Assembly: GCF_001194135.2 (NCBI RefSeq)
Contig: NC_069007.1
Span: forward strand, 1,528,113-1,575,496
Length of the DNA: 47,384 nucleotides
Origin: Octopus bimaculoides
Taxonomy: Eukaryota
Direction of reading: 5' to 3'
Shown: one piece after another, positions 11,025-37,757 of the stretch
Position numbering within the stretch: the first letter of the stretch is position 1
Layout: each line of letters begins with the position of its first letter
Position numbers and translations under genes: made by a program
The notes under the pieces: generated by a model
Told to the model about the DNA's origin: nothing
What the model saw: the letters and a program-made list of their open reading frames with translations, nothing else
The model's database searches: none

Positions 11025-12871
11025 CTGGACGGAAGTTCGATGTCTCGAAACTGTCTGGACGAAGAAAAATTGCTAGTCTGTTGACAGAGTTCATCCGACA
11101 GAATAATGTTGCCAAAGTGAAAAATACGTTGAACGTATACAACATGAAACAAAGATATATGATCGTGTCACTGAAAATAAACGGCTGTCCTTTAATTTTT
11201 ACGGCATCGCATGCAGGTAACATAAGTCTCGTCAACTATTTCCTCGATCAATGTGATGCCAACATCGAACAACGTGGAACATATGTTGGAATGAAATGCA
11301 CACCGCTATGGATCGCTGCACTTCGGAATCATTTCTACGTGGTGGTTGCATTGGTCGACCACGGTGCTGATATCAATACGCAAGCAAGTTCTGGCAAAAG
11401 CGCCGTCAGCATTAGCTGTCGAAACGCTAAGATTGTTAAGTATCTCATTCAACAAGGTGCCGACATTGATTTGCCAGATGCCAGAGGTCGCACATGTTTA
11501 ATGTATTCGGCCCCACATTTGAACATATGTCGTCGCTTGTTGTCTCTCGGAGCAAATGTTAACAGAGTTGATCATAAGGGGCAGGACGCTCTCCATTTCG
11601 CAATAAAACGAGGGCAGTTAAAAACAGTGGATTTATTTGTAAGACATGAAAGTAATCTTTTGAGGAAAGATAATCACGGGATAACACCTTTGGAGTTTGC
11701 AGCTATCCATAACAAACCGGATATTTTGGAATATCTAATCTCCACAAATCAGTACGGTAGAGAATCTATAATATCAGCTTATGAACTGTTGGGCAGCCAG
11801 TTTGCAATGGATTATCACTTGACTTATAATGCAGAACAGGTGAAGATATGGTGGTTTAGAGCCCTAGAAATGAGCTACGGAGACACAACTCAGACACCAA
11901 TCATCAAGCATTTATCCACTCATCAAAGACTGGTCACTAATTTTATCGGGGAAGAATTTACAAGCTGTGACTTCTTGAATCAAATTTTACACGATGTGAA
12001 CTCAATATGGACTCAAGGTCTATTGGTGCAGTCACGGATACTGGGACCCAGACATCCGACTGTCATCAAATCATTCATGAGAAAAACGTGTTTTCATATT
12101 AATCGTACTGACTTTCATTCTAGTTTGCAATTATTATACTGTCTGTTGATTTTCTTCGAACAGTTCGCGGACCCATTACAAAACGATATCCTTGATGTTG
12201 TAGGAACGTTCAGTTCCATCTTGATGCACACGGTATTAGCAAATAATTCCAGCACTTACTATATTTTCCGCATATTCCATTGCTTCGTCAAATACGTTAG
12301 CTATAATATAATTCCTTACTTGAAGAAATATGGTCGGAATTTAACGTTCCACAAAATACCAGATTTTGAACGTTTTTTAGTTGAAATTCTCGACTTACTT
12401 GAATTCATATTGAACTTTCCGTTGCCCGATTGTCAAGCAAGCGAGATTGAAAACAGTCTAGGTGAACTCTTACGCCATCATCCACGTGGTATGAACCATA
12501 TAACGCTACTACAACTATCAATCCGAATGTATCGCACTGTCAGTGTAGTTGAAATGCTTCTGCGATGCGGTGCGGACGTGAATGCCATTGACAACGAAGG
12601 CAACACCGCGATACATTACGCTATTCTGTATCCTTCACAACACCAAATAGAAATATTGTCCTCTTTACTTCAATACGGATGCCATGTGGATATTGTCAAC
12701 AATAATGGCTATTCTGCACTGGAATATCTTCAGCATTGCAGATTAATAACCAGCTCTTTGAAATACTGTACGCTTCAGTGCATTTGCGCCAGAATCATCC
12801 GTGAACACAACGTCAACTACAAACACATACTGTCAAAAGATTTGGCATATTTCGTAGATAAGCATGGCTAA
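11025..12871 (+). CDS. fem-1: Fem-1-like ankyrin-repeat CRL2 substrate receptor, copy 1 (large terminal coding exon, 614 codons plus 2 nt; start exon not identified)
   Basis: Seen: uninterrupted frame with N-terminal ankyrins (TPLWIAA..NH..VV..LVDHGADIN; GRTCLM; GQDALHFA; GITPLEFAA), AYELLG, QGLLVQSRILGPRHP, C-terminal ankyrins (GADVNAIDNEGNTAIHYA) and terminal TLQCICARII...FVDKH. Established: this order matches FEM1 family motifs (ALELLG, QALLIRERILGPSHP, TLQCLAARAI...FVSLH). Frame opens at AG 11023-11024 after a polypyrimidine tract; in-frame TGA at 11018-11020. Confidence 0.92.
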
Positions 12872-13229
12872 GTTCTACTGTTTATAGGATTAATTTCTAG
12901 TGAATACCAAGATAATCATTCCTTCAATGTTTTCCAAATATTACACGATTATGATTAACTAAAATGAAAACAACTGTAAAACATAACAAGTAAATGCAAA
13001 CGTTTATTAAATATTATATGTTCTCTGTATATTATCGGCTTCAATTATTGAGATTAATGCGTTATTTATCATCAGTGAATTTATAATTTTGCATCAGGTT
13101 TTAAAAGAATGGAAGTTGGTATGTCTGCATTATTTATATTATGACCACCACACTTGGATTGCTGTTGGACACGAAGCTTCTAGTATTTCTATTTATATGT
13201 TTTTAGGATATACATTCATATGGAAGTAC

Positions 13230-13445
13230 GCATGGTTGTCTAATTGAGAAAGTGGCTTTGCAACCACTTGGTATCGAGTAGAGACCCCCAGAACGCGGCC
13301 TAAATCTAGTAGGAGGGGATATTTTTTTCAATTGAACTTTTAATGCGGTGCACCAACATGTTCGCGTTTCAAAGACGTAGACAGTATCAATGCGTCTCTT
13401 CGAATTATCAATCAATGAATTTACATTAGCTGCCCTAAACGTAAA
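13230..13445 (-). mobile_element. Possible LINE endonuclease N-terminal relic
   Basis: FRAANVNSL....KRRIDTVYVFETR loosely resembles T.NV.TL...KRR.IDI..LQETRW. Confidence 0.3.
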
Positions 13446-13615
13446 CGCATTCATACATTCACGCGCGCGCGCGAACATATAAGTTTGTATGTGTGTGCGT
13501 ACATATATATATATGTGTTTGTGTATGTGTGTGTGTGCGTGTGTGCGTGCGTGCGGTGTGCGTGCGTGTGTGCATGAGCAGGCGTCGGGTGCAGAAAAAT
13601 GCATTTTTTTGAATG

Positions 13616-13663
13616 GCCATATAACTGAAGAGTGGCATCCGAAACTCGGAGTTTTATCATGGC
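13616..13663 (+). ncRNA. Minimal type-I hammerhead-ribozyme-like motif
   Basis: GCCATATAA CTGAAGA GTGGCATCC GAAAC TCGGA GTT TTATCATGGC; intact core, 9-bp stem I with one bulge, weak stem II. Confidence 0.5.
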
Positions 13664-14126
13664 TACCGAATAGTTGTCACATTATTTACAGATATATATA
13701 TATATATATATATGGAGTATCGGATACCGGGGCTGAGGTCTGCTCCTGCATAGCAGGATAATTGTTTTTAGTGCCGTGGTGAATAATTTTTGTTTAGGAA
13801 ATAGCTGCTTATTATCCTCTGAAATATTTCTGCTGGTAAAGTTTGAAGGACCAAAAAGAATGGTAATTTTTAAACTAGGACTACTACAAGAGTGTTGACC
13901 AAATAGAGATAGAATCAATGATATAAGTGAAGTAAACATTGATAGCCCTGTCAAAGTCTATTACGACAACTAACGAGGAGTGGAAGTGGACGCAGATGAA
14001 GTAAATGAAGCAATCGCTTAAAAGGAAAAGAAAGGAAAATGCGATAATAAAATCAAATGAATTTCCTCATAAATAAATGCAAATAAAATAAGGAATCATA
14101 ATAGAGTTTAGAAGCTCGTTTTCAAA

Positions 14127-14312
14127 TTGTATCAACGTCATCGTCATCATAATCATCATCATCATAATCATCTTCTTCTCCTTCTCCTTCTTTTTCTTCT
14201 CCTTCTTCTTCTTCTCCTCCTCGTCCTCCTCCTCCTCCTCCTCCTCCTTCTTCTTCTTCTTCTCCTCTTCCTCCTTCTTAATAATCATCATTATCATCAT
14301 CATCATCATCGT
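14127..14312. repeat. (CAT)n/(CTT)n/(CTC)n compound triplet microsatellite
   Basis: Direct inspection. Confidence 0.95.
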
Positions 14313-14400
14313 CGTAGTCGCCGTCCGTTTGAAAATATTAAACGACCAAGAATTGCTATAATTAAATAAATGAAAAGTCGTAAATGTGCAAGGTAATTTC

Positions 14401-14438
<38 letters not shown>

Positions 14439-15754
14439 CTATAACGATGGTGATTATTGGTGATGGAAAACATTTGAATGGTTCTATAGTATAAGAACCC
14501 TTGTTGACAGAATTAAAGCAATCATGGATTTAACTAGACACATTTTATCAAATATCATCAAGTTGTCAAATCCTGATGACGAAAACCACAGAAAAACTTC
14601 TCCTGGAATTGGGCTTACACTGGTCTGAAGGTGTGTTGCATGTCTCTAGCTGGATTTATTAATTTTTTTGAAGTGGAAGGTGGACGAAGTTATTGTAGGA
14701 ATGCAAGCGTGGTAGACATCGATATTTCGCTATTATTGTGGTTGATGACATATATAAATAGAGTTAAATGCATTTCCTCGTGTTCGACGGCGAACAAATA
14801 TCTCCTAGTGCCTCATAGTGAATTTCCGTATATACTTATAACCAGAAATACAACAAAAGTCAAGTTGTATTCTTTCCAGCATGTTCCAAAACGAATGAGT
14901 GTGCTTGTTATACATAACTTTCAATAAATATATTACCTGTAACACTTTCAGAAGTGTTACAACTCTACAGGCATCTAATCAGACATTTATATCTTACACA
15001 TTTAGTTAAATTGTTAATATGTCATTACGTATTAACTCAATCGCCATTCTTATACATCGTATTACTCGTTGATTTTTTTCTTTTCTACAATTGAAGATGT
15101 CATGCTTTTTTTTGTGGGAGTATTAGAGGCAACATAAGTTCATTTAACTAAATTTGAAGTTTGTGTAATGAGTTTCATGTTCTGGAGACTTTGCTGGTCA
15201 TTGAAATAAAAAAATAAAAATGTGAATTAATTCCAGCATTGTACCATTTTTTTTTTGATTTTACCGCCCATCATTATTCACGTTGTCCTTAGTTTAGAAT
15301 GAAGACAATAAACGGAATATATTATTTATATATTAATTAATTATCTATTTGTTCGACTATATCTATGAAAGACAATAATATACAAAATGGTTTATGGAAA
15401 AAAATAATGAAGAATATATGAAATATTGAATATAAAAGTAATTTTGTAACTTAAAGCTATAAGAGAAAATAATAGTTTTTATCCTCGCCTCACAGTCCTC
15501 CCTTCTATAATTGAAATAAAACTAATTAGAGATGTTATTATATTTATGTTCTTCAGAGAAATGTATATTGTTTAATAAAAGATCTATTTAGCTCAAGACG
15601 AAGCCACTTCAATCTTGAACTATGGTTTATACAGACAAAAGCCACTGGGTTTATCTCCTTTGATTCTCGTTTGGAGTTAACGGATACAAATTATGTTTAT
15701 ATATCAACGCATCATAAAGATACGTCGAGCAATTCTTTAAAAGATGTTCTCGAC

Positions 15755-15955
15755 TTGGCTGTTTGCTTCCCAACCACATGATTTTGGGTTTAGCTCCAAT
15801 ACCTCTTACCTTGGGAAGATGTCATCTACTACAGCCCCGGGCCGATGAAAGCCTCATGAGTGTATTTGGGAGACAGAAGCTGAAACAAGCCCCGGGCCGA
15901 TGAAAGTCTTCTGAATGTACTTGGGAGACAGAAGCTGAAACAAGCCCCGTCATAC
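15755..15955 (+). mobile_element. SINE family B 5' part with internal 55-bp tandem duplication
   Basis: tgcttcccaaccacatg...ccttgggaagatgtcatctacta; unit gccccgggccgatgaaag...gaagctgaaacaa begins at 15834 and 15889, with gccccg again at 15944. Confidence 0.75.
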
Positions 15956-16390
15956 AGATAAATAAAATAAGCCACTGCTTTGTCTGTCTCTGGGAATGTA
16001 GATCTAAAGAGGATCCGTGGGCGAGAGTGTAACGACGATGTTCTCAATATTGAAGAAGTACTCAATAATGCTTTAGCTCCATCTATCGTCGTTGATGCTG
16101 AGAGAAACGAAACCGAGACCGCTTCACAAAAAAAAAGCATTCGGCTAAAAAGCGTCTACAGAGGGAGTTGGAGTGAGACAGAGAAACATATACGGATATA
16201 AAAGGAACGAGAGGGGATGCATTAGGAGGAATGGGTGTGGTGTATAGTAGAAAATAGATTTAGCGAATATATGTGACGTGGTGATGAAAAGTGGACGGGA
16301 AATGATGCTGAGAAGATTGGCTTAACCGTGAAGGAGAGAAGCACAGAAACATAAGCATCCATATGTATATATACACTTATGCATTTATAT

Positions 16391-16425
<35 letters not shown>

Positions 16426-16886
16426 NNNNNNNNNNNNNNNNNNNNNNNNNNNNNNNNNNNNNNNNNNNNNNNNNNNNNNNNNNNNNNNNNNNNNNNNNNN
16501 NNNNNNNNNNNNNNNNNNNNNNNNNNNNNNNNNNNNNNNNNNNNNNNNNNNNNNNNNNNNNNNNNNNNNNNNNNNNNNNNNNNNNNNNNNNNNNNNNNNN
16601 NNNNNTAACACTCACTGAATGAAATCATCTGATAAGACCCTATCATGTGGTTTCGAGATTTAACCATTCAGGTTTTGCTTCTCTTCAGGGGGCTCCACAA
16701 ATTACTCCGGGTTAAAGAGATAGCCTATTTCTTATTAGCGCATGAAGAAAATAACCGTTGAACAGTGAGCGCCAAATCCAAAGTGGTTTCACCTAATATG
16801 TATATAGACATATAACAATAAGTTTTTATAACGATAAATTAATATTATGATTTATTAAATACTTTATAATATAATAATCGTTTTAT

Positions 16887-17237
16887 ACAGATTTTCGAAA
16901 TATATTTTTAAGCCTTTATTTTTTTACTGCAAAATCCTTTAAAAACAACTGTGTTAAAATCTGAAGTTCTTAAATTTACAACTTGAGGCTCGGCAGCCCA
17001 CTCGAAATTTTCATTAATGAGCGGAAAATCAGTTTATAACACGTTTGCCGTTCCTCCTTTTATTTTTTTCATTCCTTGTTACGAATCGATTTGCGAAAAC
17101 GGCACTTTTTTCACAAATTTTCGAAGTATGTTTTTAAGATAATATATCAGATTGTAAAATTGTTTAAACACAATAGTGTTAAAATTTCAAGCTCTAAAAT
17201 ATATACCTTTAGGCTCCGCAATGCACTTGAAATTTTG
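16887..17237. repeat. Diverged direct repeat, about 125-bp copies about 226 bp apart
   Basis: aca.attttcgaa.tat.tttttaag...gtgttaaaat.t.aag.tct.aaat...aggctc.gca....act.gaaatttt at 16887-17012 and 17113-17237. Confidence 0.7.
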
Positions 17238-17449
17238 AAATTATGTGAAATAAATTGACCTTTCGACTTTCTTATTTCCAAAACTAGGTCAGCGAATATA
17301 TGTATTTCACGAGGGCTGGATTACACATACATTAAAATGAATTAAATAGATTGTCAAGATTCTAGCAGAAAAGATAATTCTTCTTTGGCAAAAGGCATCC
17401 ACCCTTTGTGTTACGTTTGAGTCAGTTAAACGAAAAATCATAAATGGTT

Positions 17450-18010
17450 CCTTTCCTGACGTAGAAGGATGACCGTTATCTGGCCGGTTCATTATAATCA
17501 CTCTCTGAAAGATCGGCTGAGATACTGCATGATCTATTTCGCCAAATATCATTTTGCGATTAATCCGTTGATCCTGTAAAAATCTGTGGTACTTTTTTTT
17601 TTAATTCTACAACTGCAGTGTTTTAAGGAGTTGCACTAAATTTTTTGTTGCATTATTTTTTTAAACTCATTACACTTTGTTTGAAACGATGGCTCATTTT
17701 TTCCTACTTTTCACAGATTTTAGTAATGCTTGGTACTTTAGATAACAGTTTAGGATTTTCGGTTTAACTTACTCAGTCGCAACACGAGAAATGGATACCT
17801 TTTCCCGACGAAGAATGATCTTTTTTGCTACAATCTCGATAATTTGTTTAATTGAAGTATCTTTCTTACAGATATGATTTTCTTTTTGTCGTTCAAATAA
17901 AACACACACGTCCTTATAATTTGGAAATCCTGGCTCGCTAAGTTCACATAGAGTACCAAATATTAGGCTGTCGGTATGATGACGTGTCATTGGCGTATTA
18001 GTCTTCACTA
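17450..18010 (-). mobile_element. Degenerate DNA-transposase N-terminal fragment, hAT-like (probably hATm type)
   Basis: Seen: MTRHHTDSLIFGTLCEL...FPNYKDV...IIEIVAKKII....KVSI..V and, after frameshifts, QDQRINRKMIFGEID. Recalled invertebrate transposase N-termini read TR..T.C.IFG...EL....LPTY.DV...EIVA.KI..IW.KASIP.VS and DQR..RKM.IG.VD. Family label is inference. Confidence 0.55.
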
Positions 18011-18822
18011 AATGTAAACAACACTAAATTTTATACGAACACTAATTTTAATACAATGGCTTAAAGTCAAAGTACAAAGCAGAGAACTTCACACACGTAC
18101 AACGTACGTCCATACGCAATGACCGATGCAACGACACTGGAGAGAAGTTCACACTCCTTATAAACAATGAGGAAACTTAAGATATTAGTCAATTGTATGA
18201 TATGTGTAGTCTTTTGCATTCTGGTATGTAGCGATATGTATTGATTTCGACTTATTATCTACGAAATCCAAAATTCGACCGAAAATAGTGATTTTTAAAA
18301 TTTTTATTTGAATTGCGGCGCCTAAAAAATATTTAACAGCAAAGTACATTATTCACGTTTCTTTAAACCCTAATTTGCAACGAAATATCGTTTCTTGGTT
18401 ACTGTACTTCATGTTGACTTAATTTCTTCAATTACACACACATGCGCGCATGCACTCACACACACCTCATCCCTTCGTTCTATGCGCAGAAGTGGTGCAC
18501 AGTAACAGAATCTTCGGATCGAGTCAAATATAACCAACTATTCCATATCGGTGCCGTAGTATCCACATGGGTCTTTTGTACTGGCATTGTGTCCTGTGAA
18601 ATCAATGATGAAGTCAAACCAAATACTGACAATTTGAAATCAATGAATGCAATCGTTTCAGATCTGCTTCTTAGATGTTAGGAAATGCGTCCGTTAAGCA
18701 AGTCCTTCGACAAAGGAAAGTCTTATGTAATGGCCACATCCCTTAATATGTATTACGCACACCTGGAACGTACGCATGAAATGACTTCAAAATATCGTTG
18801 CTTGCTTTGAATTTATTATTAG

Positions 18823-18899
<77 letters not shown>

Positions 18900-19191
18900 A
18901 TAGATAGATAGATATGTACATACATAGATAGACAGACAAATAGATAGATAGATAAATAGACAGATAGACATAAATAGACAGACAGACAGATAAATAATAG
19001 ATAGATAGATAGATAGAAGTGTGTATATATTTGTGCTCGCGCGCAACACACTCACGCACAATCACTCCTGCGCACACATATAACTTAACTTTAATAATTC
19101 ATGTCGGGGACAGAGAACAGAATTCGAAGTGAAGTGAGAGTGGTACATTAACAAAATTTCTAAGAAAGAAAAGTATAAGTAGTGTTTGTAA

Positions 19192-19223
<32 letters not shown>

Positions 19224-19279
19224 TCTGGAAACAGAAGATTAATTTTTTTTTTATTCTATCTTTATGTCTACAATTTTCC

Positions 19280-19331
19280 TGTTCATTTCTTCTTCTATAT
19301 CGTTTCTCTCTTCTACGGAATATTTAAACAG
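19280..19331 (+). promoter_or_regulatory. 3' splice acceptor of Fem-1 copy 2
   Basis: Pyrimidine tract (tttcttcttctatatcgtttctctcttct) then ttaaacag| at the position homologous to copy 1. Confidence 0.7.
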
Positions 19332-21178
19332 TTGAACGGAAGTTCGATGTCTCGAAATTGTCTGGAAGAAGAAAACTTGCTAAACTGTTGACTGAATTCA
19401 TCAGAGACAATAATGTTTCCAAAGTGAAAACTACGTTGAAGAAATACAACTTGAAACAAAGATATATGATCATCTCATTGAAAGTAAACGGCTGTCCACT
19501 GTTTTTCACGGCGTCAGATGTAGGTAACGTAAGTCTTGTTAATTATTTCCTCGATCAATGTGATGCCAACATTGAACAACGTGGAACATATGCTGGAATA
19601 AAATGTACACCACTTTGGATCGCAGCACTTCGAAATCATTTCTACGTGGTGGTTACTTTGGCTAAACGCGGTGCTGACATCAATACGCAAGCAAGTTCTG
19701 GCAAAAGTGCCATCAGCATCAGCTGTCGAAATTCTAAGATTGTTAAGTTTCTTGTACAGCAAGGTGCCAATGTTGACTTACCAGACGCAAGAGGCCGCAC
19801 ATCTCTAATGTGTTCGACAGAACACTTGATCATATGTCGTCGCTTGTTGTCTCTCGGAGCAAATGTTAACAGGGTTGACCATAAGGGTCAGGACGCTCTC
19901 CATTTCGCAATAAAACGAGGGCAGTTAAAAACAGTGGATTTATTTGTAAGACATGGAACTGATCTTCTGAGGAAAGATAATAACGGCACAACACCTTTGG
20001 AGTTTGCAGCTATCCATAACAAACCGGATATAATAGAATTTCTAATCTCCACAAATCAGTACGGTAGAGAATCTATAATATCAGCTTATGAACTGTTGGG
20101 CAGCCAGTTTGCAATGGATTATCACTTGACTTATAATGCAGAACAGGTGAAGATATGGTGGTTTAGAGCCCTAGAAATGCGCTACGGAGACACAACTCAG
20201 ACACCAATCACTAAAGATTTACCAAGTTATCAAAGACTGGTCACTAATATTATCGGAGAAGAATTTACAAGCGTTGATAATTTGAACCAAATTTCACACA
20301 ATGCGAATGCAATGTGGACTCAAGGTCTATTGGTGCAGTCACGAATATTGGGTCCCAGACATCCGACTACGATCAAATCACTAATGAGGAAAATATGCTT
20401 CCACATAAAACGGTGTGAATTCCATGAGAGTATACAATTATTATACTGTCTGTTGAGCTTCTGTAAATATTTCTCTGATCCCCTTCAGAACGATATCCTT
20501 GATGTGATAGAAACGTTCACATCGATTTTAATGCACACAATATTAACAAACAACACCAGCACCCATCATTTATCTCCTATTTTCCATTGCTTCATCAATT
20601 ACGTATGTTCACATGTCATTCCATACCTGAAACAACAAGGAACAACGATAAGCAATCAAAAAGTACCCGATTTGGAACGTCTTCTAATTGAAATTCTGGA
20701 TTTGCTTGAATTAGTTTTGAACTATCCCCTAGATGAATTACATTCAAAAGAAATCGAAAGCAGTTTAGTGGAACTCATAAGTCATCGCCCACGTGGAATG
20801 AACCAAATAAGTCTGCTGCAACTTTCAATTCAAATGTACCATCCTCTTAATGTAGTTGAAATGCTTCTGAAATGCGGTGCAGACGTGAATTCCATTGACA
20901 ACGAAGGCAACACCGCGATCCATTATGCTATTCTGTATCCTTCGCAATATCAGACAGAAATATTATCTTGTTTACTGCAATATGGATGTCATGTTGATAT
21001 CGTCAACAACAATGGTTATTCTGCACTAGAATATCTCCAGCTTTGCAAATTGGTATCCAACCCTTTGAAATACTGCACGCTTCAGTGCATTTGTGCCAGA
21101 AGCATTCGTAAACACAACGTAAACTACAGGCATGTACTGTCAAAAGAACTGGTATATTTCGTTGATAAGCATGGCTAA
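19332..21178 (+). CDS. fem-1: Fem-1-like ankyrin-repeat CRL2 substrate receptor, copy 2 (tandem paralog of copy 1)
   Basis: Seen: same 1847-bp length as copy 1 with constant 8307-bp offset at both ends, about 78% aa identity by hand count, same motifs. Acceptor AG at 19330-19331, in-frame TAA at 19325-19327, AATAAA about 30 nt after the stop. Confidence 0.92.
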
Positions 21179-22429
21179 GTACTACTGTTTGCAGTAAATT
21201 TTCTAATTAATAAATAAAATTGTCTTAAACGTTTGTAATAAAGGATTACAAACAAATAAAAGAGCAATCGTGATATACTCTCGAAAATTACAAATAATAA
21301 TACTAATAATACAACTAAGAAAAATATGTTTCTATATCACCTATTTTATTTCGTTGACGTGTGTATTATATTTTAAAATATGGGACTGTATACCTGCGAA
21401 TAAGTTGTTGCATGTCTTTTTAAACGGCATGTTGTTTCCCTTTGAAATATTCCATAGACAAAATTTAGGATTGACTTGGAGTTCAGTAACACAACAGCAA
21501 CAGATGGTTATTTGTTACCATTTTATGATGACAAACATTTTAGTTTTAACTGAATCTTCCGCGTATGTTTGGCTTTATCTTTAAATTATTTGGTTCCCAT
21601 ACACAAGTAAAGCTCTTATTCTTTAATTTTTGAAAATTACTGACTTCTTTTTCTTGGCTTAAGTTTTTAATTTTGGGGCGAAAACAGGATTTGTTACGTG
21701 CGCCATTTAATTTTCATGCCAAAGAAGAAACCCCCAATGTATGCAAGAATTAGCAGCTAGATCTTCCGTAAATGTCACCCGATCTTATAAAAATGAACAC
21801 ATTCAATAATGTAATCTTTAGTTCTGAGACATATGCGGGATGGCCAACGTTGGAGTTCCTTGATTATATAGATAATCTGTTGTGAAACATTTGGAAGTTA
21901 AATAGAAACAAAAAGACAATGAATGACAAATTTCGTCAGACAAAAATGTAACTTCGACGCGGAGCGAAATATCAGAATATGCCATAGGGAAATATAAATT
22001 TTCAATTTGAATTAGCTTTGCTGATTTCACCGAAAACTGAGTCCTTGTACGTGTTCACAATTAATTCATTCTGTATACTGATGTTCAATTCCAATCCACA
22101 TGCTGTTGATATTTATTTTATAATTGATTAATCGAAGTTCAACCAGAAGCAGTTATACTTTGATGATCAGCGTTCGAAACATAAACACCACAATTCTTTT
22201 TTTGGAGAAAAGAACTATAATTTGTAATATATACTCCCATTATATGAGATAGCATTCTGTAACTTAGCAGAGATTTGATGGCGTTTGTATCCGGTTGTGA
22301 TACCCTCTGTAAACATAATCCCAAATTAAGTCTATAGAAGTGGGTGATCATATAGCGTTTACTCTACGTCTGCATAGATACGATAAGTAGTTAATTTAAA
22401 GAAGGAAAATTGTGAAGAGAAGCATCGAA

Positions 22430-24564: not shown

Positions 24565-25423
24565 NNNNNNNNNNNNNNNNNNNNNNNNNNNNNNNNNNNN
24601 NNNNNNNNNNNNNNNNNNNNNNNNNNNNNNNNNNNNNNNNNNNNNNNNNNNNNNNNNNNNNNNNNNNNNNNNNNNNNNNNNNNNNNNNNNNNNNNNNNNN
24701 NNNNNNNNNNNNNNNNNNNNNNNNNNNNNNNNNNNNNNNNNNNNNNNNNNNNNNNNNNNNNNNNNNNNNNNNNNNNNNNNNNNNNNNNNNNNNNNNNNNN
24801 NNNNNNNNNNNNNNNNNNNNNNNNNNNNNNNNNNNNNNNNNNNNNNNNNNNNNNNNNNNNNNNNNNNNNNNNNNNNNNNNNNNNNNNNNNNNNNNNNNNN
24901 NNNNNNNNNNNNNNNNNNNNNNNNNNNNNNNNNNNNNNNNNNNNNNNNNNNNNNNNNNNNNNNNNNNNNNNNNNNNNNNNNNNNNNNNNNNNNNNNNNNN
25001 NNNNNNNNNNNNNNNNNNNNNNNNNNNNNNNNNNNNNNNNNNNNNNNNNNNNNNNNNNNNNNNNNNNNNNNNNNNNNNNNNNNNNNNNNNNNNNNNNNNN
25101 NNNNNNNNNNNNNNNNNNNNNNNNNNNNNNNNNNNNNNNNNNNNNNNNNNNNNNNNNNNNNNNNNNNNNNNNNNNNNNNNNNNNNNNNNNNNNNNNNNNN
25201 NNNNNNNNNNNNNNNNNNNNNNNNNNNNNNNNNNNNNNNNNNNNNNNNNNNNNNNNNNNNNNNNNNNNNNNNNNNNNNNNNNNNNNNNNNNNNNNNNNNN
25301 NNNNNNNNNNNNNNNNNNNNNNNNNNNNNNNNNNNNNNNNNNNNNNNNNNNNNNNNNNNNNNNNNNNNNNNNNNNNNNNNNNNNNNNNNNNNNNNNNNNN
25401 NNNNNNNNNNNNNNNNNNNNNNN
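24564..25423. other. Largest assembly gap; ten further gaps near 3575, 8697, 9127, 16426, 32263, 33893, 35642, 37074, 38644, 42227
   Basis: N-runs flanked by simple repeats; exons could be hidden in them. Confidence 0.99.
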
Positions 25424-25464: not shown

Positions 25465-27136
25465 TGTGTGTGTGTGTGAGAGAGAGTAGGAATTTACAAA
25501 AAAAAACAGAAGACGATGACAGGTGTGTAAACAACAAACAGGTGTATTAGTTTAACGCTCTGGGATGTGAGAAAGTATTTTATATTTCGAGCCTACGCTC
25601 CTCAACAGAACTGAACACGAGAAAATAGAGAGAATAAAAAAAGGTTTAGTGGTTACAATGTCCGGATTAAGAGAAAACGGAGTCAAAAAACAAAAGGAGT
25701 AATGGTGGTTGTCTACTTACTCCTTATGCAGAATGTGCCTACCTCTGGTACTTACACTTTAGATCCATTATGGAGATTTATGTGTGTTTTTTTTTTCAAC
25801 CAGACCCTGTATTGAAAAGACATCCACATAGATTGCATTTCCGATTTGGACCACCATGAGCTGCTGTTAAGTTTTGATTTTGTGGCTCTTAGAATATCTT
25901 TTGAGGCCTCCGTTAGATTTGCAGACCTTATGGCATACACGGCATTGAAAGAGGCATTCCTGCTTGACCAATAATGTTGTGTCCACATCATGAACAAGTT
26001 ATGGCGTAGATTAATTGTCGGGTGAACAGGTAAACTTAGTCTTAATTTTTAATATTTATCCTCGTTTTAAATTGCATTCTGAACCTTCCAGTATATTGAG
26101 ATATGTTTCACAATTAGGTCGCCTGAATCTTTCAACTCTTGGTTCCGTTGTTGCTGCGTAAAATTTCGCAGTTCTGTGTATTAACTTTTGCGGTTTTAGT
26201 TTTCATTTTGTACTTTAGAGTGAATGTGTGTGTGCCAAGAATTTAGTTCAGCTTAGGGTCCTTAGTGACTATGGTTAAATTTTGAATAATAGTGTTACAC
26301 ACCTCATTGTTTATAGGGTTGTGGGTAGAAATATATTGTATTTTAAATCGGGTGTGTTATTCCGTCTTCTCCTAATGTCTAGATATCAATGCTCAACATT
26401 CATCATATCAATATATTTAAATATATAGATGCATATAACATTTTAGATATATACATACATATAAAATATTTAAATATACACATAAATATAACATATTTAA
26501 ATGTATACATGCATATAACGTTTTACCGTGTTCGTATATATAACATATTTATATGCACAAATACACGGTATATGCAAAGTATATACTTGTATAACGTTTA
26601 AATTCTTAAGACTATATGCCTGTGTGTATGTGTGTTAGAGAGAGAGGTTTGAGTAAGTGAAAACATGTTTATGAGCGTATATCTATAGCGTATCCGAATA
26701 AAGTCGACATAAAACATAAGCAGCAATTCTCGGCCTTGCCTAAGTTCATTAATCCCGAAGATAAACATAGTCACACGAATTCATTATATTATGAATGAAT
26801 TGCTTTCGAAAGATATTGATAATCTTCAGTTGTTTGGGGAGTGTTGATTGATTAGAATTATGGAACCCGAGCTACTCGGAAAATGCTTCAAGCTGAGCTT
26901 CAAAGAAACACGCGCAGGAATATATAAATAAAACACATAAATTAGCGCAAAATGTGGAAAATGAAAACATAAATTTTAGTTTTACGTATTTTTTGTAATT
27001 TTCTTGAAAAGCATGCTTGAATTTTAAAATGCTACTAATTTACATAATTACATAAATTATTTCCTTAATCAATATCTTTCTGCGATATATATTACTTTAC
27101 TTGTGGGTATACAACCAATTTTCGCGTGTCTTTCAG

Positions 27137-27268
27137 GAACTACGAAGAACGAATTCCTGCTCTTTCCTGCGATGCAGGAAGAAACATTATCCTGGACATG
27201 GGAATTCAGAAATAATTCCAGTGGTTTTATGTTCTTGCGTGTTTGAAAACGAAAAGCCCAATAGAATC
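27137..27268 (+). other. Candidate 132-bp internal exon of an unidentified gene (ELRRTNSCSFLRCRKKHYPGHGNSEIIPVVLCSCVFENEKPNRI)
   Basis: ttttcgcgtgtctttcag| acceptor, |gtaagt donor, length divisible by 3, phase-0 frame open; no family recognised. Confidence 0.3.
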
Positions 27269-28769
27269 GTAAGTTATTAGAAATTCCATGCCTTACCTAT
27301 TACTGCTTAAATTTCAGTCCGGAGGTGTTAATACTATCCTCGAGATTTAATCTGTTTGAAAACTGCAAACATTTTGTGCAATGAATAGCTTCTATTCTTT
27401 TCTACTAAAATTTACAAATGGTTTTGTAAGCATTTCATTGTGAACCACACAATGTAACCAATATTTTACAATCTCAAAGTAGAACAACGGCCACTGCCAG
27501 CAGCCAATCAGGCACACAACGGCCAAATGCATAACAATCTCAATCTAACCCGTTGGTAAATAACATTCTTCTCATTTTTTAATATCACATTATCGTCATC
27601 TGAATACAAGAAGGTATCCGAACGATGAGATATGACTACTCGCTTTATTAAAACATTAACTAATGATTTTATAATGCAGTGTAATAAATGAATACGTATA
27701 TATATATATATATATATATATACGTGTGTGCCTGTGTGTATTTGGGCGTGTGTATATATATACACATGTATGTATGTGTGTCATTGTTCAGTTCTATTTC
27801 AAGAGTTCTTGCCAATACAGAAAGAGCCGGTTTCTAACCTAGATTCAAGGCTCCTTTATTGGACTTTTTAAATAGACAACAGAATATGTTTGTATGTATG
27901 TAGGTATGTATGTATGTATGTAGGTAGGTAGGTAGGTAGGTATGTATGTGCAGATTTGCTTTTTTTATGTATGTATTCTCATGCATAGTTACATATCTAG
28001 AATGCTCATATATATTTAAATAATAAACTTCTGGAAGGTTTTACAGATTTCTACAGTTCTAGTGACGGATAGGATCTGTACTCTTCGAATTAGCATTCTC
28101 ATAAACGCTAGAGAATTTGAATGGGTTAACGAAACCTACGTAACTAAACTTTACTTAGACTGTTGTTTCCTTGTGAAGATGGGTCTTTCCGCCCGAAATA
28201 TTAACGTTTTATTACACTCCCCACATTGTCAGAAGCTTTCTATTTTCTCTTTCTTTACCCACTTCATTTCAATTTGCTCCAGTCCACACATCTGTAAAAA
28301 GGAACCAGTCCGACGAACTCGCTCTTCTGTTCGCCTATTCGTCTAGCAATTGGAGAGGAATCATTCAAATGCTAAAACGATGAAAAGCGAATTTTGACCA
28401 GCGTTATATAACATCCGATAGTACGGCTTATCGCTTCATCACGTGGCTTATAGCATTAACCTGACTCATCTAGAATATTACAAAGCAGAAGCATGGACCA
28501 CGTGACGCTTTCAGTACGCAATTTACTATTACGTACGGACGTAACATCTACACAGTAACATCTCTAACTTATTCTTCTCTTAATCTGCCAAAATTAATGC
28601 GATACTCATAAATTATTCAAATCTGCGTGAAATATTCTATCAAAATTTTCTAATAAAATCCAAGAAACCCTTTATTTTAAGCTTAATACCTTATTATATT
28701 GATCCGTATTAATACTTGCGTTTATGTACGTATCTGTAAATATTTGTATGTGTGTGTATGTATGTGTGT

Positions 28770-32262: not shown

Positions 32263-32593
32263 NNNNNNNNNNNNNNNNNNNNNNNNNNNNNNNNNNNNNN
32301 NNNNNNNNNNNNNNNNNNNNNNNNNNNNNNNNNNNNNNNNNNNNNNNNNNNNNNNNNNNNNNNNNNNNNNNNNNNNNNNNNNNNNNNNNNNNNNNNNNNN
32401 NNNNNNNNNNNNNNNNNNNNNNNNNNNNNNNNNNNNNNNNNNNNNNNNNNNNNNNNNNNNNNNNNNNNNNNNNNNNNNNNNNNNNNNNNNNNNNNNNNNN
32501 NNNNNNNNNNNNNNNNNNNNNNNNNNNNNNNNNNNNNNNNNNNNNNNNNNNNNNNNNNNNNNNNNNNNNNNTATATATATATATATATATATA

Positions 32594-32624: not shown

Positions 32625-33992
32625 ATATAAGGAATTCAGCTTATCTACCCAGCCATGATGGTTATAGATTGATATCCTTGTACAAGGAAGAGCTCCACTA
32701 TAACTAAACTTCCGCGGGGACGAGTTGTGTATTCCTTATTGTCCTTCGCCCCATACGGTAAAATGTATAAGAATACTCTACAAAGTGTAACGTTACTTCA
32801 TAAATGAATTACAAAGGAACAGGACAATGATGCTTAATTCTGGCTGCACGGGTTCTAATGCACCAAGCTTCTGTGTGTTTATGAAAATTCATAGCTAACC
32901 CGCGGTATGTTGTCATTCATTTGTATATGTATATATGCAATGAACTGTTACGTGATAGAAAATTCAACAGGGAAAGTACTCCATTCGGTGAGAGACATGT
33001 ATGATTCATATAAAAGGCAGAATGCATGTATTTAAAGTTTACGAATAGTTTCATACGTTGAGAAATACATAAACATACCTTTACGTCTTAGCTTTTGTAC
33101 TTTCCTTTTCTGTTTATCGTTTACCGTATTTTACATTCTGTGTTTTCTATATGCTGCCTTCTTAGATTCTTTTTTTTTTGTGTGTTTTGTCTATTATTAA
33201 ATTTTTTAGTTCGTTATAATATGTGGCTTATGCCTGATGATGCGTTTGAATCGATCTCAACATATGAAACGCTTAATAGCATTTAAATACATGTATTGTG
33301 TCCCTCAAATAATATATGTATGTATATATGTATTTGGTACCTAGTTAGGTCGGAATAGAATGCACACAAATACAACAATGACAGATAAATACCAACCTCG
33401 GTGGAGAGGTACAGACAGAATGATATCTGGGTAATGTATGAAGCCAAATTGAGCTAGCCAGCCACTTACATTTTATTAATTACGCAGTCCACGCAAGTGG
33501 CAGGTTCGGGGAGGGGTAAATTATAAATAAGTCAGTAACAATTGATAAATAGGTGTCAGTTCATTATAACCATGTCTAACGAATTTTTTAATTGACCAAT
33601 AAGTGCATTATATCATTATGAAATAACAATTTTTTTATTGATTTTGTTTTTCCAGCTGAATCAATGAATTTTACAATCAACATAGTATTTAAGCGAACAT
33701 CATAGCTACAGTGCCATGATGTTGATATCATTTTTCAGAATTTTGCAATTTATTTCTATTGCGATACTTACTCTTCAAAATCACATCACCAATGCTAATG
33801 ACTTTGCCATTCACAATAAGAGTTTCAACGTCTGTTAACAATTACTTAGAACTAATGTTTCAGGTGCGTTGAAATAACTTGACGAGAGCGGGNNNNNNNN
33901 NNNNNNNNNNNNNNNNNNNNNNNNNNNNNNNNNNNNNNNNNNNNNNNNNNNNNNNNNNNNNNNNNNNNNNNNNNNNNNNNNNNNNNNNNNNN

Positions 33993-34367: not shown

Positions 34368-35469
34368 AGCATTTATGTACGTATTTGTGTGTGCCTGTGT
34401 CTGTGTGTACGCGTATATGTTCGAATGTTATGCAATATGCATGATGTTTCATGTAAGTTTCATTGAAATATCGATCCTTTTTCAGATTAATTTGTGCTTC
34501 TGACAGACATGAGATATAACTCGCCTCTGCTGTAGTTTGATCTCAAAAACCTCCAGTCCCTCCTCTTTCCCTTTTTACACAACATCACCAGTAACTGCAT
34601 TGTCGTACATCGACGCCAACGGCATAAAGTTGCCGGAGAATAAAAAAAAAACACTAAATACAAAAAAGAAATACAGAAATCTGACATTTTAGTAACCTCC
34701 AGACATTTGCCGGACGGAAAGACTATTCTGCTTCGAAATGAACAAAACTTGATCAGTTATTAGTGAAATAATGAGATTATAGTATTGGAGGACATTAAAC
34801 GTGGTCTGTTGGAAACAGGAAAATATTGGCATTTTACTATATTTCCTTTGGTGTAGGTTACACTATAAGAAAATATATGCTATACACTGTTGTACTAATA
34901 TGCATTTTGTACTATTTTTAGTTGTGCAGTGGAGTCTTTGCGCAGAAATCTTTGTCAAATTACACCCTATTGTCTAAAAGAAGACAAATTGTAAATATAA
35001 TATTGGGCAATGAAAGCTCATGGTATATAAACACAGATAGGGCTTGGGAGATCTGATTACCGCTAAAATGCTTTTGATGATAGTTTTAAATGAACGGGTT
35101 TGGAAATAGTGAGGAAAGAAAATGAAAATTAGTATCAGGAAGAGGAACAAGAATAACATCAATATTAAACGTAGCTGCGACACCTTAAACAACAAGAACA
35201 ACAAGAAGAGGGAGTGGAGAAAAATCTATTTTCTCAGCAAGAATAGGAATAACAATTGCACTCACAGTAATTACACTAATACCACTAAAAATACTACCAC
35301 CATGACTGGAAAGAATAGTGTACCATCGGAATCACTATGACCATCACCGTTGAAAACCGGGAGCGCCACCAAACACTGCAATCCCAAATTGTTTTAATTA
35401 TGTTAATACAATTTGTAATAATAGTCACATCGTTAGTACTGTTACTGTAACAACAACACTAATGGCAAA

Positions 35470-35641
35470 GTCAGCATCACCACGACCACCACCACGACCA
35501 CCACCACAATCACGACTAACAACATCAACAATCATCATCACCACGATCTCTACTATCACCACAACCACCAGCAACAGCACAACTACCACCATCACCACCA
35601 CCACCACCACCGCCACCAACACCACCACCACCACCACCAAC
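35470..35641. repeat. (ACC)n/(AAC)n triplet-rich tract running into a gap
   Basis: Direct inspection. Confidence 0.9.
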
Positions 35642-36856
35642 NNNNNNNNNNNNNNNNNNNNNNNNNNNNNNNNNNNNNNNNNNNNNNNNNNNNNNNNNNN
35701 NNNNNNNNNNNNNNNNNNNNNNNNNNNNNNNNNNNNNNNNNNNNNNNNNNNNNNNNNNNNNNNNNNNNNNNNNNNNNNNNNNNNNNNNNNNNNNNNNNNN
35801 NNNNNNNNNNNNNNNNNNNNNNNNNNNNNCCATAGCCAACGACAAGAAGGAAACCGCTCTCAGCAACGAACAACAACAGCAAAAACCCAAATGGATCCAC
35901 CAAACAACAACACCGTCTTCCTCCCTCGTACGAGTAGCTAACACCAAAAACATCAGTGGAACTACAAACGCTACCAACCCCACTAGTGAGGAAAAAAAAC
36001 AAAAAAACCCTACTAGTGCCGCCATCACCAACAACGATAGCAATTACCGTATCAATAGCAACGCCAATACCATTACCACGTCTACAGGCATATTGCAACG
36101 GCAACAATAGAAACGTCACTGTTACAGTTACAAACAATAAACCGGCAACAAGAAAACTGCCGCCAAAATAGCTACGAACAACATTCGCGTCTAAACAACG
36201 ATAATACGACTGCAGCAACAAGGACAACAACGTCACGTGAACGAGCGAACGTTTAAGTGCTCACACACCAAATCTATCTCAAAACCACACTTTCTCGCAT
36301 TGATTCTCGACCAGGGTCGGTCCACATTACGCTGGAGTGGGACCCATATAATATGTTGTTACGATTTATATGAAATAGATTCGTGAAGCTTCTATAATAC
36401 ACAAAATAGTTTTGAGAAATTTTATGCTATACTTAATATTATTTAATTCTAAAAAAATATAGTAAGATGTTATTTCTACCTCGAGTGGCTATGAGAGTCC
36501 AGAGAGTCGTTCGAAACATCCGTACACGTGAAGGTTGGCGGTACAATTTCTTTCATCATTGATCAACGCGTTCAAACAGTTCGAAATTAACATCAACAAA
36601 CAACGAGAGATGAAGAACAGGCAACGTGGTATAAATCGATTCTTATAAATATCAACGAAGTGTCCTTCATGCTGGTTCCTATTTCATGAATGGATTAAAT
36701 GTTCCAGAGACGTAATTGTCGCGATTAGAAGGAATTTTATGAGGATCTTACTGATAGAACAACAAATCGGTTCCGTTGGAGAAGATACTCTATGATATTT
36801 GTGCTGTTTTCTGTTGGAACGCATAGGCGTTCAAATCCCACCGAATCCAAAGTTTT

Positions 36857-36929
36857 TCTACTGCTTCTGTTACTCCTCCTCCTCTTGCTACTGCTACTAC
36901 AACTACTACTGCTGCACCTGCTGATGCTG

Positions 36930-36988
<59 letters not shown>

Positions 36989-37524: not shown

Positions 37525-37571
<47 letters not shown>

Positions 37572-37757
37572 CCTGCTTCTTCTTCTGCTACTCCTCCTAC
37601 TACTACTGCTCCTTCTGTTGCAACAACGACAACTACTATTACTACTACTACTACTACTCTTGCTGTTGCTACTACTACTACTACTACACCTGCATCTGTT
37701 GCTGCTGTTGCTGCTGCCACTGTTGCTCCGCCGCCATTACTACTGCTGTTGCTATAA
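36857..37757. repeat. Compound (ACT/CCT/GCT)n tract with a higher-order unit of about 90 bp, spanning a gap
   Basis: ccacccctgcttcttctgctactcctcctactac.actgctccttctgttgcaacaacgacaactactattactactac at about 36983 and 37567, partial copy from 37431. Confidence 0.9.

What the first reader, a model, noticed from the sequence alone, without database searches (positions are those of the whole stretch)
11025..21178. Tandem pair of divergent Fem-1-like Cul2 adaptors that appear to have lost the canonical C-degron pocket
Seen: two intact, collinear 614-codon exons (about 78% aa identity by hand count) with ankyrins, the helical region and a terminal BC-box. Established (recalled from FEM1C structures): C-terminal-Arg degrons bind acidic/aromatic residues in the VNFDGETIEG loop, RAACFDGH and LHDCAE. 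Seen here: that loop is shortened to GTY(V/A)G(M/I)K, RAACFDGH becomes SISCRN, and LHDCAE becomes LHFAIK (acidic replaced by hydrophobic/basic). Inference: a lineage-specific family of ubiquitin-ligase receptors with new substrate specificity, such as a different degron class or an immune/germline target, rather than the conserved FEM1A/B/C orthologues.
Basis: partly seen in the sequence, partly recalled or inferred. Interest (0 to 1): 0.7.

Follow-up and report, generated by a model that had tools for sequence, protein, structure and literature searches.

The report
Octopus divergent FEM1-like receptor, twin exons
This octopus locus carries two duplicated 614-codon exons, each encoding nearly a whole FEM1-like ubiquitin-ligase receptor, in which the residues that bind a C-terminal arginine in canonical FEM1 proteins have all been replaced, mostly by basic ones; public gene models treat the two exons as alternative endings of one gene.

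Summary
Window 11025-12871 and 19332-21178 (+) are two intact 614-codon exons, 78% identical. Each aligns end to end with human FEM1C, by sequence (E 9e-57) and by predicted fold (TM 0.81). The assembly gap lies in non-coding spacer between them.

The window is Octopus bimaculoides, locus LOC106875467. These are not stand-alone single-exon genes. Both exons open with a phase-1 splice acceptor and have no start codon of their own. Gene models in two octopus species join both to the same upstream ATG mini-exon, which lies off-window. A 51-nt cassette exon sits at 1502-1552.

Both copies are under purifying selection (dN/dS 0.10-0.22). The duplication is older than the O. bimaculoides/O. sinensis split.

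Three alignment methods agree that the canonical Arg/C-degron residues are replaced: D77, S117, R121, F125, D126, D188 and E191. The 15 pocket positions go from 5 acidic and 1 basic to 0-1 acidic and 4 basic. The basic residues at four of them recur in the cuttlefish-cluster relatives and more weakly in Argonauta.

The proteins belong to a cephalopod family inside an older divergent protostome FEM1-like clade, separate from canonical FEM1A/C and FEM1B.

The BC box is kept, but the Cul2-contacting proline is serine.

Verdict: a real, annotated but unstudied variant of a known receptor family. Function is inferred only.

The parts
1502..1552 (+). 51-nt cassette coding exon (phase 1 at both ends) that encodes (N)ITYPALQDSVCSSHLL(S). 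It is included in the 633-aa A isoform and skipped in the 616-aa B isoform.
   Evidence: tblastn of the P0001 N-terminus hits 1501-1551. The acceptor is tttttcag|AT and the donor is T|gtgagg. Two synonymous and no non-synonymous differences from O. sinensis. The reading-frame arithmetic reproduces P0085.
10972..11024 (+). Polypyrimidine tract and AG acceptor of terminal exon A. This is the 5' edge of the duplicated unit.
   Evidence: About 88% identical to O. sinensis over the upstream 300 nt.
11025..12871 (+). Terminal coding exon A: 2 nt, 614 codons and a TAA stop. It encodes ANK1-7, a TPR-like helical domain, ANK8-10 and a VHL box (UniProt A0A0L8GR18).
11276..11296 (+). Shortened ANK2-3 loop GTYVGMK. 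It replaces the canonical VNFDGETIEG, so F76 and D77 have no acidic or aromatic counterpart.
11408..11425 (+). SISCRN. It replaces the canonical RAACFDGH: R121 to S, F125 to R, D126 lost or N, plus a 2-residue deletion. The preceding S117 is K.
11591..11608 (+). LHFAIK. It replaces the canonical LHDCAE: D188 to F (as in FEM1B) and E191 to K.
12770..12856 (+). VHL box. The BC box TLQCICARII is conserved. The Cul2-box equivalent is ILSKDLAYFV, with Ser in place of FEM1C Pro606.
   Evidence: Contact residues are from PMC12580893.
12872..13179 (+). Probable 3'UTR of exon A, with an ATTAAA at 13006.
   Evidence: The first 300 nt are 92.6% identical to O. sinensis, then similarity drops. The poly(A) site itself is not verified.
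16426..16605 (.). Assembly gap in the non-coding spacer between exons A and B.
19282..19331 (+). Polypyrimidine tract and AG acceptor of terminal exon B.
19332..21178 (+). Terminal coding exon B: 2 nt, 614 codons and a TAA stop (UniProt A0A0L8GPR5). It has the same motifs as A at 19583-19603, 19715-19732, 19898-19915 and 21077-21163.
21179..21324 (+). Probable 3'UTR of exon B, with AATAAA at 21209, 21237 and 21255.
   Evidence: The poly(A) site itself is not verified.

Best explanation
The window holds most of Octopus bimaculoides LOC106875467.

Gene structure: a shared first coding exon contributes only ATG plus one base. It lies about 3 kb upstream of the window. It is spliced either through a 51-nt cassette exon to giant terminal exon A (633 aa), or directly to the tandemly duplicated terminal exon B (616 aa). 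One transcription unit can therefore make two different, nearly full-length FEM1-like proteins by choice of last exon.

Protein: each has the FEM1 architecture, an N-terminal ankyrin solenoid, a TPR-like helical domain, C-terminal ankyrins and a VHL box. Each most likely works as a substrate receptor that docks on Elongin B/C through its intact BC box (inferred).

Binding groove: it has been rebuilt. The residues that hold the C-terminal carboxylate (S117, R121) and the arginine guanidinium (D77, D126, plus E191) in canonical FEM1 are replaced. The groove carries K117, R125, R148 and K191 instead. It should not bind Arg-ended degrons and more likely binds an acidic or otherwise different motif (inferred).

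A versus B: they differ at two groove positions, 155 (Y/C) and 158 (P/E), and most strongly in the helical domain. They probably have overlapping but distinct targets (inferred).
For: Identity and gene models:
- P0085 and P0083 (O. bimaculoides) match the window exactly from the first residue the window encodes. O. sinensis XP_036370568 and XP_036370570 are annotated as isoforms X1 and X2 of one gene.
- Both O. sinensis coding sequences start at the same ATGA|GTAAGT.
- The split-codon arithmetic reproduces MNITY...LLS-GRKF and M-I-ERKF.

Both copies functional:
- dN/dS is 0.10-0.15 between orthologues and 0.16-0.22 between paralogues. There are no indels among the four copies.

Fold:
- AlphaFold2 model pLDDT 88.4. 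Best PDB match is FEM1C in the CRL2 complex, TM 0.81.
- hhalign probability 100%, E 1e-87.

Pocket:
- The 15 positions are invariant from horse to bivalve to insect in FEM1A/C. In octopus they read G--WKSR-RYPHHFK in copy A, which keeps only W88 and H187 of the FEM1C residues. The functional roles of these positions come from PMC10026218 and PMC11053023.
- Basic character at positions 117, 125, 148 and 191 is shared across the cephalopod family.

BC box:
- EloC-contacting positions L586, 589, 590, 594, 609, 612 and 613 are conserved.
Against: - No RNA or protein data were examined. The shared-start architecture rests on computational gene models from two pipelines.
- RefSeq for O. bimaculoides instead fuses A and B into a 1247-aa protein.
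- The Cul2-box proline (FEM1C Pro606) is Ser and Lys608 is Asp/Glu, so Cul2 recruitment may be weakened or changed.
- Pocket polarity was judged from aligned residues, not from model coordinates.
- Canonical octopus FEM1 genes were not directly retrieved. One search lists only the best 120 of 953 hits, none named as a cephalopod.
Confidence: 0.7

Rival explanations
1. A and B are two independent tandem genes, each with its own promoter and first exon. The shared-start models are annotation artefacts.
For: Each exon has its own downstream poly(A)-like signals. The 6.5-kb spacer was not searched exhaustively for a tiny ATG-N exon. No RNA evidence was examined.
Against: Two independent pipelines in two species use the same ATG-A exon for both. 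Both acceptors are in the same phase, and neither exon has its own start codon.
Confidence: 0.15
2. The locus encodes a single 1247-aa tandem double-FEM1 protein, as in RefSeq XP_052833072.
For: The model exists in RefSeq. CATG|GCTAAGT at the end of exon A could act as a GC donor in the right phase.
Against: It needs a rare GC donor that overlaps the stop codon. An older version of the model needs a non-canonical junction. O. sinensis is annotated as two isoforms instead. The 300 nt after the A stop are 92.6% conserved, as expected of a real 3'UTR.
Confidence: 0.05
3. They are simply fast-evolving 1:1 orthologues of FEM1A/C, and long-branch attraction creates the apparent separate clade.
For: The best PDB sequence hit is FEM1C. 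The tree is distance-based with long branches. A canonical cephalopod FEM1C was not directly shown.
Against: All members of the divergent clade share a 2-residue deletion in ANK5. Gastropods have both a canonical FEM1C (Haliotis, Biomphalaria) and a divergent-type gene (Gigantopelta). Several cephalopod paralogue lineages exist.
Confidence: 0.07
4. The proteins bind Elongin B/C but no longer recruit Cul2. They would act as cullin-less decoys or scaffolds, or use another cullin.
For: Pro606, which inserts into the CUL2 pocket in FEM1C (PMC12580893), is Ser or Ala only in the Octopus A/B plus P0087 subclade. It is kept in Argonauta, the second cuttlefish paralogue, the gastropod and the insects.
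Against: The rest of the VHL box is conserved and under the strongest purifying selection in the protein (dN/dS 0.04-0.10). No Cul5-box motif is present. Biomphalaria's canonical FEM1C also lacks the Pro.
Confidence: 0.2
5. They are decaying or non-functional duplicates.
For: The pocket residues are lost. No exact full-length match in a transcript-like contig was on record for the octopus proteins.
Against: The ORFs are intact in two species. dN/dS is 0.10-0.22 and there are no indels. The replacement pocket residues are conserved across cephalopods. The fold is predicted with confidence.
Confidence: 0.03

Closest known systems
Human FEM1C (CRL2-FEM1C substrate receptor; PDB 9ua3, 8pql, 6lbn)
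   Same: Full-length collinear architecture (ANK1-7, TPR, ANK8-10, VHL box). Predicted fold TM 0.81. BC-box residues that contact Elongin C are conserved.
   Different: Only about 25-27% identity. D77, S117, R121, F125, D126, D188 and E191 are all replaced. The ANK2-3 loop is 5 residues shorter. There are 2-residue deletions in ANK4 and ANK5. The Cul2-box Pro606 is Ser.
Human FEM1B
   Same: Phe at the position of FEM1C D188 (FEM1B F193) and His at the position of FEM1B H185. Same overall fold.
   Different: FEM1B keeps S122, R126, F130 and the FDG loop, and these are lost here. The tree puts FEM1B outside both other clades, but it was rooted on FEM1B by choice.
Divergent protostome 'fem-1 homolog C-like / CG6966-like' proteins (Gigantopelta aegis XP_041370697, Thrips palmi XP_034255821, Toxorhynchites XP_055634096)
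   Same: Same clade (bootstrap 100). Shared ANK5 2-residue deletion, LH[YF]A motif, loss of D126 and E191.
   Different: Most of those, including all the named gastropod and insect members, still keep the carboxylate anchors S117 and R121 and the Cul2-box Pro. Cephalopods lost S117 and R121, shortened the loop and gained basic residues.
Cephalopod relatives: clusters that include Acanthosepion pharaonis CAE1275116 and CAE1229995; Argonauta hians GAB1604504
   Same: 37-46% identity. Same pocket remodelling (R121 to S in all). Basic residues at 117, 125, 148 and 191 in the two cuttlefish-cluster relatives, fewer in Argonauta. The cuttlefish-cluster contig L005 and the Argonauta locus both show a phase-1 acceptor in front of one giant coding exon.
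   Different: The tandem A/B duplication was seen only at the Octopus locus. No second copy lies within 10 kb in Argonauta.
Genes with alternative 3' exons that encode different functional modules (Drosophila lola, mod(mdg4)); comparison from general knowledge
   Same: One promoter and 5' part joined to alternative downstream coding exons.
   Different: Here the common part is only 1 or 18 residues, so essentially the whole protein is swapped.

Membership tests
FEM1 family (broad sense) | Collinear architecture: N-terminal ankyrin repeats, TPR-like helical domain, C-terminal ankyrin repeats, C-terminal VHL box | tested here: met
   phmmer residues 44-613 against FEM1C 32-616, E 8.8e-57. hhalign probability 100%, 585 columns. 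AF2 model TM 0.81 to 9ua3_A.
FEM1 family (broad sense) | BC box that contacts Elongin C ([STP]LxxxCxxx[AILV], plus FEM1C L586, L589, A590, I594, L609, F612, V613) | tested here: met
   TLQCICARII. Positions 586, 589, 590, 594, 609, 612 and 613 read L, I, C, I, L, F, V. Contact list from PMC12580893.
CRL2 (Cul2-type) VHL-box receptors | Cul2-box proline (FEM1C Pro606) that inserts into the CUL2 Pro5/Tyr43/Val47 pocket | tested here: not met
   Ser in A and B of both Octopus species. Pro is retained in Argonauta, the second cuttlefish paralogue, the gastropod and the insects.
CRL2 (Cul2-type) VHL-box receptors | Physical assembly with EloB/C-Cul2-Rbx1 | not testable with these tools
   Needs co-IP or reconstitution.
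Arg/C-degron-binding FEM1 (FEM1A/B/C, C. elegans FEM-1) | Acidic residues that bind the terminal Arg (D77, D126; E191 for upstream Lys/Arg) | tested here: not met
   D77 falls in a deleted loop, or aligns to V/A. D126 is deleted or N. E191 is K. All three alignment methods agree.
Arg/C-degron-binding FEM1 (FEM1A/B/C, C. elegans FEM-1) | Carboxylate anchors Ser117/Arg121 (FEM1B Ser122/Arg126) | tested here: not met
   S117 is K and R121 is S in all four octopus sequences. R121 is S in every cephalopod relative.
Canonical FEM1A/C orthology group | Placement inside the FEM1A/C clade | tested here: not met
   NJ tree with 200 bootstraps: FEM1A/C clade at 100% excludes them, and they fall in a separate clade at 100%. 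The method is distance-based, so long-branch artefacts are not excluded.
Divergent protostome FEM1-like clade | 2-residue deletion in ANK5 (YKGH to xx--), LH[YF]A motif, loss of D126 | tested here: met
   alignment blocks. Clade bootstrap 100.
Single gene with alternative terminal exons | Both terminal exons spliced to one shared start-codon exon | tested here: inconclusive
   Sequence, phase and annotated proteins are consistent in two species. No transcript reads were examined, and exon 1 lies outside the window.

The most novel reading that the evidence does not exclude
Cephalopods carry a FEM1-derived receptor family whose degron groove has switched from acidic to basic. It would therefore read a different class of degron, for example acidic or phosphorylated C-termini. 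In Octopus, one promoter would deliver two such receptors by mutually exclusive choice between duplicated 1.85-kb terminal exons that each encode almost the entire protein.
Probability: 0.3. Interest if true: 0.6.

Novelty: new variant of a known kind. Interest (0 to 1): 0.45.

Why it matters
FEM1 proteins are the textbook readers of arginine-ended C-degrons. Their 15 pocket positions are invariant from mammals to bivalves and insects in the FEM1A/C sequences compared here.

A conserved, selected FEM1 scaffold in which every key pocket residue has been swapped, mostly to basic residues, would be a natural experiment in how a degron reader is retargeted. It could point to a new degron class.

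The wider divergent clade has gastropod, thrips, mosquito and cephalopod members. This suggests an under-described fourth FEM1 subfamily in protostomes that automated pipelines label inconsistently.

The twin terminal-exon layout is a compact way to express two receptors from one promoter. It is also an annotation hazard, because RefSeq fuses them in one species.

Tried and rejected
- Searched for a third copy or pseudogene in the window by tblastn. None found.
- Looked for the start-codon exon inside the window. Only the 51-nt cassette exon is present. Window position 1 aligns 3.1 kb downstream of the O. sinensis ATG exon.
- Word-indexed homologue searches with A and B were swamped by giant ankyrin proteins and missed the cephalopod relatives. 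The exhaustive HMMER search found them.
- Tried to retrieve canonical octopus FEM1 by searching with Saccoglossus FEM1C. Only the best 120 of 953 hits are listed, and none is named as a cephalopod.
- The primary FEM1C structure papers (PMIDs 33398168, 33398170) are not held. Residue roles were taken from PMC10026218, PMC11053023 and PMC12580893.
- The Logan contigs that carry the cuttlefish-like relative turned out to include intron sequence upstream of the acceptor, so they give no evidence of expression.
- The neighbouring 638-aa ORF at the gastropod locus is a translated satellite repeat, not a paralogue.
- Other ORFs of 100 aa or more in the window have no Pfam match. No Rfam family or tRNA was found.
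- Literature searches for LOC106875467, FEM1D and cephalopod fem-1 found no study of this gene.
- A first tree attempt with Biopython bootstrapping timed out and was replaced by a numpy implementation.

Full report
**1. What is in the sequence**

The + strand carries two long open frames that end at 12871 and 21178. Neither has an in-frame ATG near its beginning. An in-frame stop lies a few codons upstream of each, and each is preceded by a polypyrimidine tract and an AG:
- A: aacag|CTGGACGG, exon start 11025
- B: aacag|TTGAACGG, exon start 19332

From the acceptor, each exon is 2 nt plus 614 codons plus TAA. The two translations are 78% identical with no gaps. No further copy is present in the window.

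At the DNA level the duplicated unit is 10972-12906 against 19282-21212, 82.9% identical. That is the exon plus about 50 nt of upstream intron and about 35 nt after the stop.

The assembly gap at 16426-16605 lies in the spacer between the exons, next to a (TA)n run. In the gap-free O. sinensis assembly the flanks are collinear. The corresponding ~275 nt are a (CA)n run plus non-coding sequence. The gap is irrelevant to both frames.

**2. Source and gene structure**

The closest database protein is O. sinensis 'protein fem-1 homolog CG6966-like isoform X1' (P0001, 94% identity). Its 90% cluster contains:
- O. bimaculoides A0A0L8GR18 (633 aa), identical to exon A preceded by MNITYPALQDSVCSSHLL
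- O. bimaculoides A0A0L8GPR5 (616 aa), identical to exon B preceded by M-I
- O. sinensis isoform X2, the B type
- a RefSeq model of 1247 aa (LOC106875467) that fuses A and B

The window is therefore O. bimaculoides.

The 17-residue extension is encoded by a 51-nt exon at window 1502-1552, with acceptor tttttcag|AT and donor T|gtgagg.

In O. sinensis both coding sequences begin at the same position, ATGA|GTAAGT. The split-codon arithmetic fits both proteins:
- A+AT = Asn, then exon 2, then T+CT = Ser, then exon A, giving 633 aa
- A+TT = Ile, then exon B, giving 616 aa

Window position 1 aligns 3.1 kb downstream of that ATG exon, so exon 1 lies outside the window.

Two annotation pipelines in two species thus describe one transcription unit with two alternative, duplicated terminal exons. 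Each exon encodes all but 2 or 19 residues of the protein. I did not see RNA evidence, so this remains a model-level statement.

The fused 1247-aa model needs a GC donor that overlaps the stop codon of A (CATG|GCTAAGT). I consider it unlikely.

The same layout, a phase-1 acceptor in front of one giant coding exon, is present in a cuttlefish-like contig and at the Argonauta paralogue.

**3. Are both copies functional?**

All four exons (A and B in two species) are intact and have no indels relative to each other. NG86 estimates:

| Comparison | dN/dS | dS |
|---|---|---|
| A orthologues | 0.15 | 0.17 |
| B orthologues | 0.10 | 0.25 |
| A vs B paralogues | 0.16-0.22 | 0.52-0.75 |

The duplication therefore predates the bimaculoides/sinensis split, and both copies are under purifying selection. 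Selection is strongest in the C-terminal ankyrin and VHL-box part (0.04-0.10).

Exons are 94-95% identical between species. Most intron blocks are 73-88% identical.

**4. What kind of protein**

Pfam sees only ankyrin repeats. Full-length comparisons go further:
- phmmer aligns residues 44-613 to FEM1C 32-616 (E 8.8e-57) and to FEM1B (E 2.5e-45).
- Profile-profile alignment of the cephalopod family against canonical FEM1A/C gives probability 100%, E 1e-87, over 585 columns.
- An AlphaFold2 model of A (pLDDT 88.4, pTM 0.77) matches FEM1C in the neddylated CRL2 complex best (9ua3_A, TM 0.81), followed by other FEM1C and FEM1B structures.

The FEM1 architecture is confirmed.

**5. The pocket**

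Published work establishes the following:
- FEM1C Asp126 binds the C-terminal Arg. The D77A/D126A double mutant abolishes degradation of Arg/C-degron substrates. D77 and E191 variants lower affinity. Thirteen of 15 contact residues are conserved even in C. elegans FEM-1 (PMC10026218).
- In FEM1B, Ser122 and Arg126 hold the terminal carboxylate. Tyr84, Trp93, Phe130, Tyr153, Ile160, Tyr163, His185 and Phe193 line the groove (PMC11053023).

I mapped these to FEM1C numbering. In the alignment the 15 positions read:
- FDEWSRFDHIYVHDE in every FEM1A/C from horse to Haliotis, Argopecten and Cimex (position 180 is Ile rather than Val in Biomphalaria and Bombus)
- G--WKSR-RYPHHFK in Octopus A
- G--WKSR-RCEHHFK in Octopus B

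HMMER, MAFFT and hhalign agree on three points:
- D77 has no acidic counterpart.
- S117 is K, R121 is S and F125 is R.
- D126 is deleted or N, D188 is F and E191 is K.

Acidic residues fall from 5 to 0-1, and Lys/Arg rise from 1 to 4.

The replacements are shared by the cephalopod relatives. R121 is S in all of them. In the octopus and cuttlefish-cluster sequences positions 117, 125, 148 and 191 are K, R or H. Argonauta keeps basic or His residues only at 148 and 191. This argues for a rebuilt groove rather than a decayed one.

D188 to F is also the FEM1B state, so that single change is not unusual. A and B differ at groove positions 155 (Y/C) and 158 (P/E). Each state is fixed in both species.

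**6. The ligase-docking end**

The BC box TLQCICARII fits the consensus, and the Elongin C-contacting positions are conserved.

FEM1C Pro606 inserts into a CUL2 pocket, and Lys608 hydrogen-bonds CUL2 (PMC12580893). Here these positions are Ser and Asp/Glu. The loss is confined to the subclade of Octopus A/B and one cuttlefish paralogue. Argonauta, the other cuttlefish paralogue, the gastropod and the insect relatives keep Pro.

Elongin B/C binding is therefore a reasonable inference. Cul2 recruitment is less certain.

**7. Relatives and phylogeny**

An exhaustive HMMER search of 1.84 billion representatives found only five full-length single-stretch relatives among the best 150:
- the O. sinensis orthologue
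- two clusters that include Acanthosepion pharaonis proteins (46% and 42% identity)
- Argonauta hians 'fem-1 homolog C-like' (37%)
- a gastropod protein clustered with Gigantopelta aegis 'fem-1 homolog C-like' (32%)

I built a neighbour-joining tree from 39 sequences and 601 columns with 200 bootstraps. It gives:
- a canonical FEM1A/C clade (100%) that includes gastropod and bivalve proteins
- a separate clade (100%) that holds the cephalopod family (100%), Gigantopelta, thrips, mosquito and unnamed sequences
- FEM1B outside both (the tree was rooted on FEM1B by choice)

All members of the divergent clade share a 2-residue deletion in ANK5, which supports the grouping independently of branch lengths.

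Gastropods have both types. The divergent type is therefore an old paralogue, and the octopus proteins are fast-evolving members of it rather than FEM1A/B/C orthologues.

Within cephalopods at least three lineages exist, and Octopus A/B are co-orthologous to one of them.

Caveats: the tree is distance-based, and I could not retrieve canonical octopus FEM1 directly.

**8. Mechanism**

Shown:
- gene layout at the sequence level
- selection on both copies
- fold
- residue replacements
- BC-box conservation

Inferred:
- docking on Elongin B/C
- substrate recognition through the ankyrin groove
- loss of Arg/C-degron binding
- preference for an acidic or otherwise different motif
- regulated choice between A and B

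No evidence bears on immune or germline roles. A 'derived' male-biased fem1-like gene has been described in a pearl oyster (PMC4082630). It may belong to the same clade, but that was not tested.

**9. Verdict**

Five corrections apply:
- The models treat them as alternative terminal exons of one annotated gene.
- The family is cephalopod-wide, inside an older protostome clade.
- One of the cited changes also occurs in FEM1B.
- The Cul2-box proline is missing.
- The genes already exist in public annotation, though they appear unstudied.

Interest is moderate.

Noticed in passing
window 11027-12868 vs 19334-21175: Synonymous divergence between A and B is uneven. dS is 0.34 in the N-terminal ankyrin third against 0.62-0.74 in the rest (O. 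bimaculoides). The first ~60 nt after the acceptor are almost identical. This suggests partial gene conversion or extra constraint, such as splicing signals, at the 5' end of the exons.
   Followed up: partly
window 12866-12880 and 21173-21187: Both exons end ...AAGCATGGCTAAGT. The GC(T)AAGT that overlaps the stop codon resembles a GC-type splice donor. It is what the fused 1247-aa RefSeq model for O. bimaculoides uses.
   Followed up: partly
window 4210-6021, 14796-15887, 26418-27282: Intronic and intergenic blocks that are 86-90% identical to O. sinensis over 0.9-1.8 kb, which is higher than the surrounding non-coding sequence. They may be conserved non-coding elements or shared repeats. ORFs of 100 aa or more that overlap the first two blocks have no Pfam match; the third block has no such ORF.
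   Followed up: partly
window, 11 gaps (3575-3650, 8697-8800, 9127-9435, 16426-16605, 24565-25423, 32263-32571, 33893-33992, 35642-35829, 37074-37429, 38644-38795, 42227-42471): Where the flanks were read, the assembly gaps are bordered by simple or low-complexity repeats, mostly (TA)n and (CA)n runs. Many of the long 'ORFs' in the window are translations of such repeats or run through N stretches.
   Followed up: partly
window 35460-37840: A low-complexity stretch with strong strand asymmetry (GC skew -0.17 to -0.40). It translates as long poly-T/P/S/L/V runs around two gaps. No gene-like signal was found.
   Followed up: no
L002 14145-16061 (gastropod contig, ENA ERZ25071447): The 638-aa 'gene' called next to the gastropod FEM1-like gene is a tandem repeat whose unit translates to about 42 residues, not a protein-coding paralogue.
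   Followed up: yes
L007 9950-10000 (Argonauta hians) and L005 516-571 (cuttlefish-like contig): In both relatives the conserved coding sequence continues upstream of the start used by the annotation (Argonauta) or by the automatic ORF call (L005), as far as a phase-1 acceptor. Those protein models are probably N-terminally truncated.
   Followed up: partly
alignment (Gigantopelta, Frankliniella, lgn_P0076): Gastropod and thrips members of the divergent clade share a nearly identical groove segment (N[IH]NGGTCLINSVQSA). This points to a conserved, distinct specificity for this unnamed FEM1 subfamily across protostomes.
   Followed up: partly
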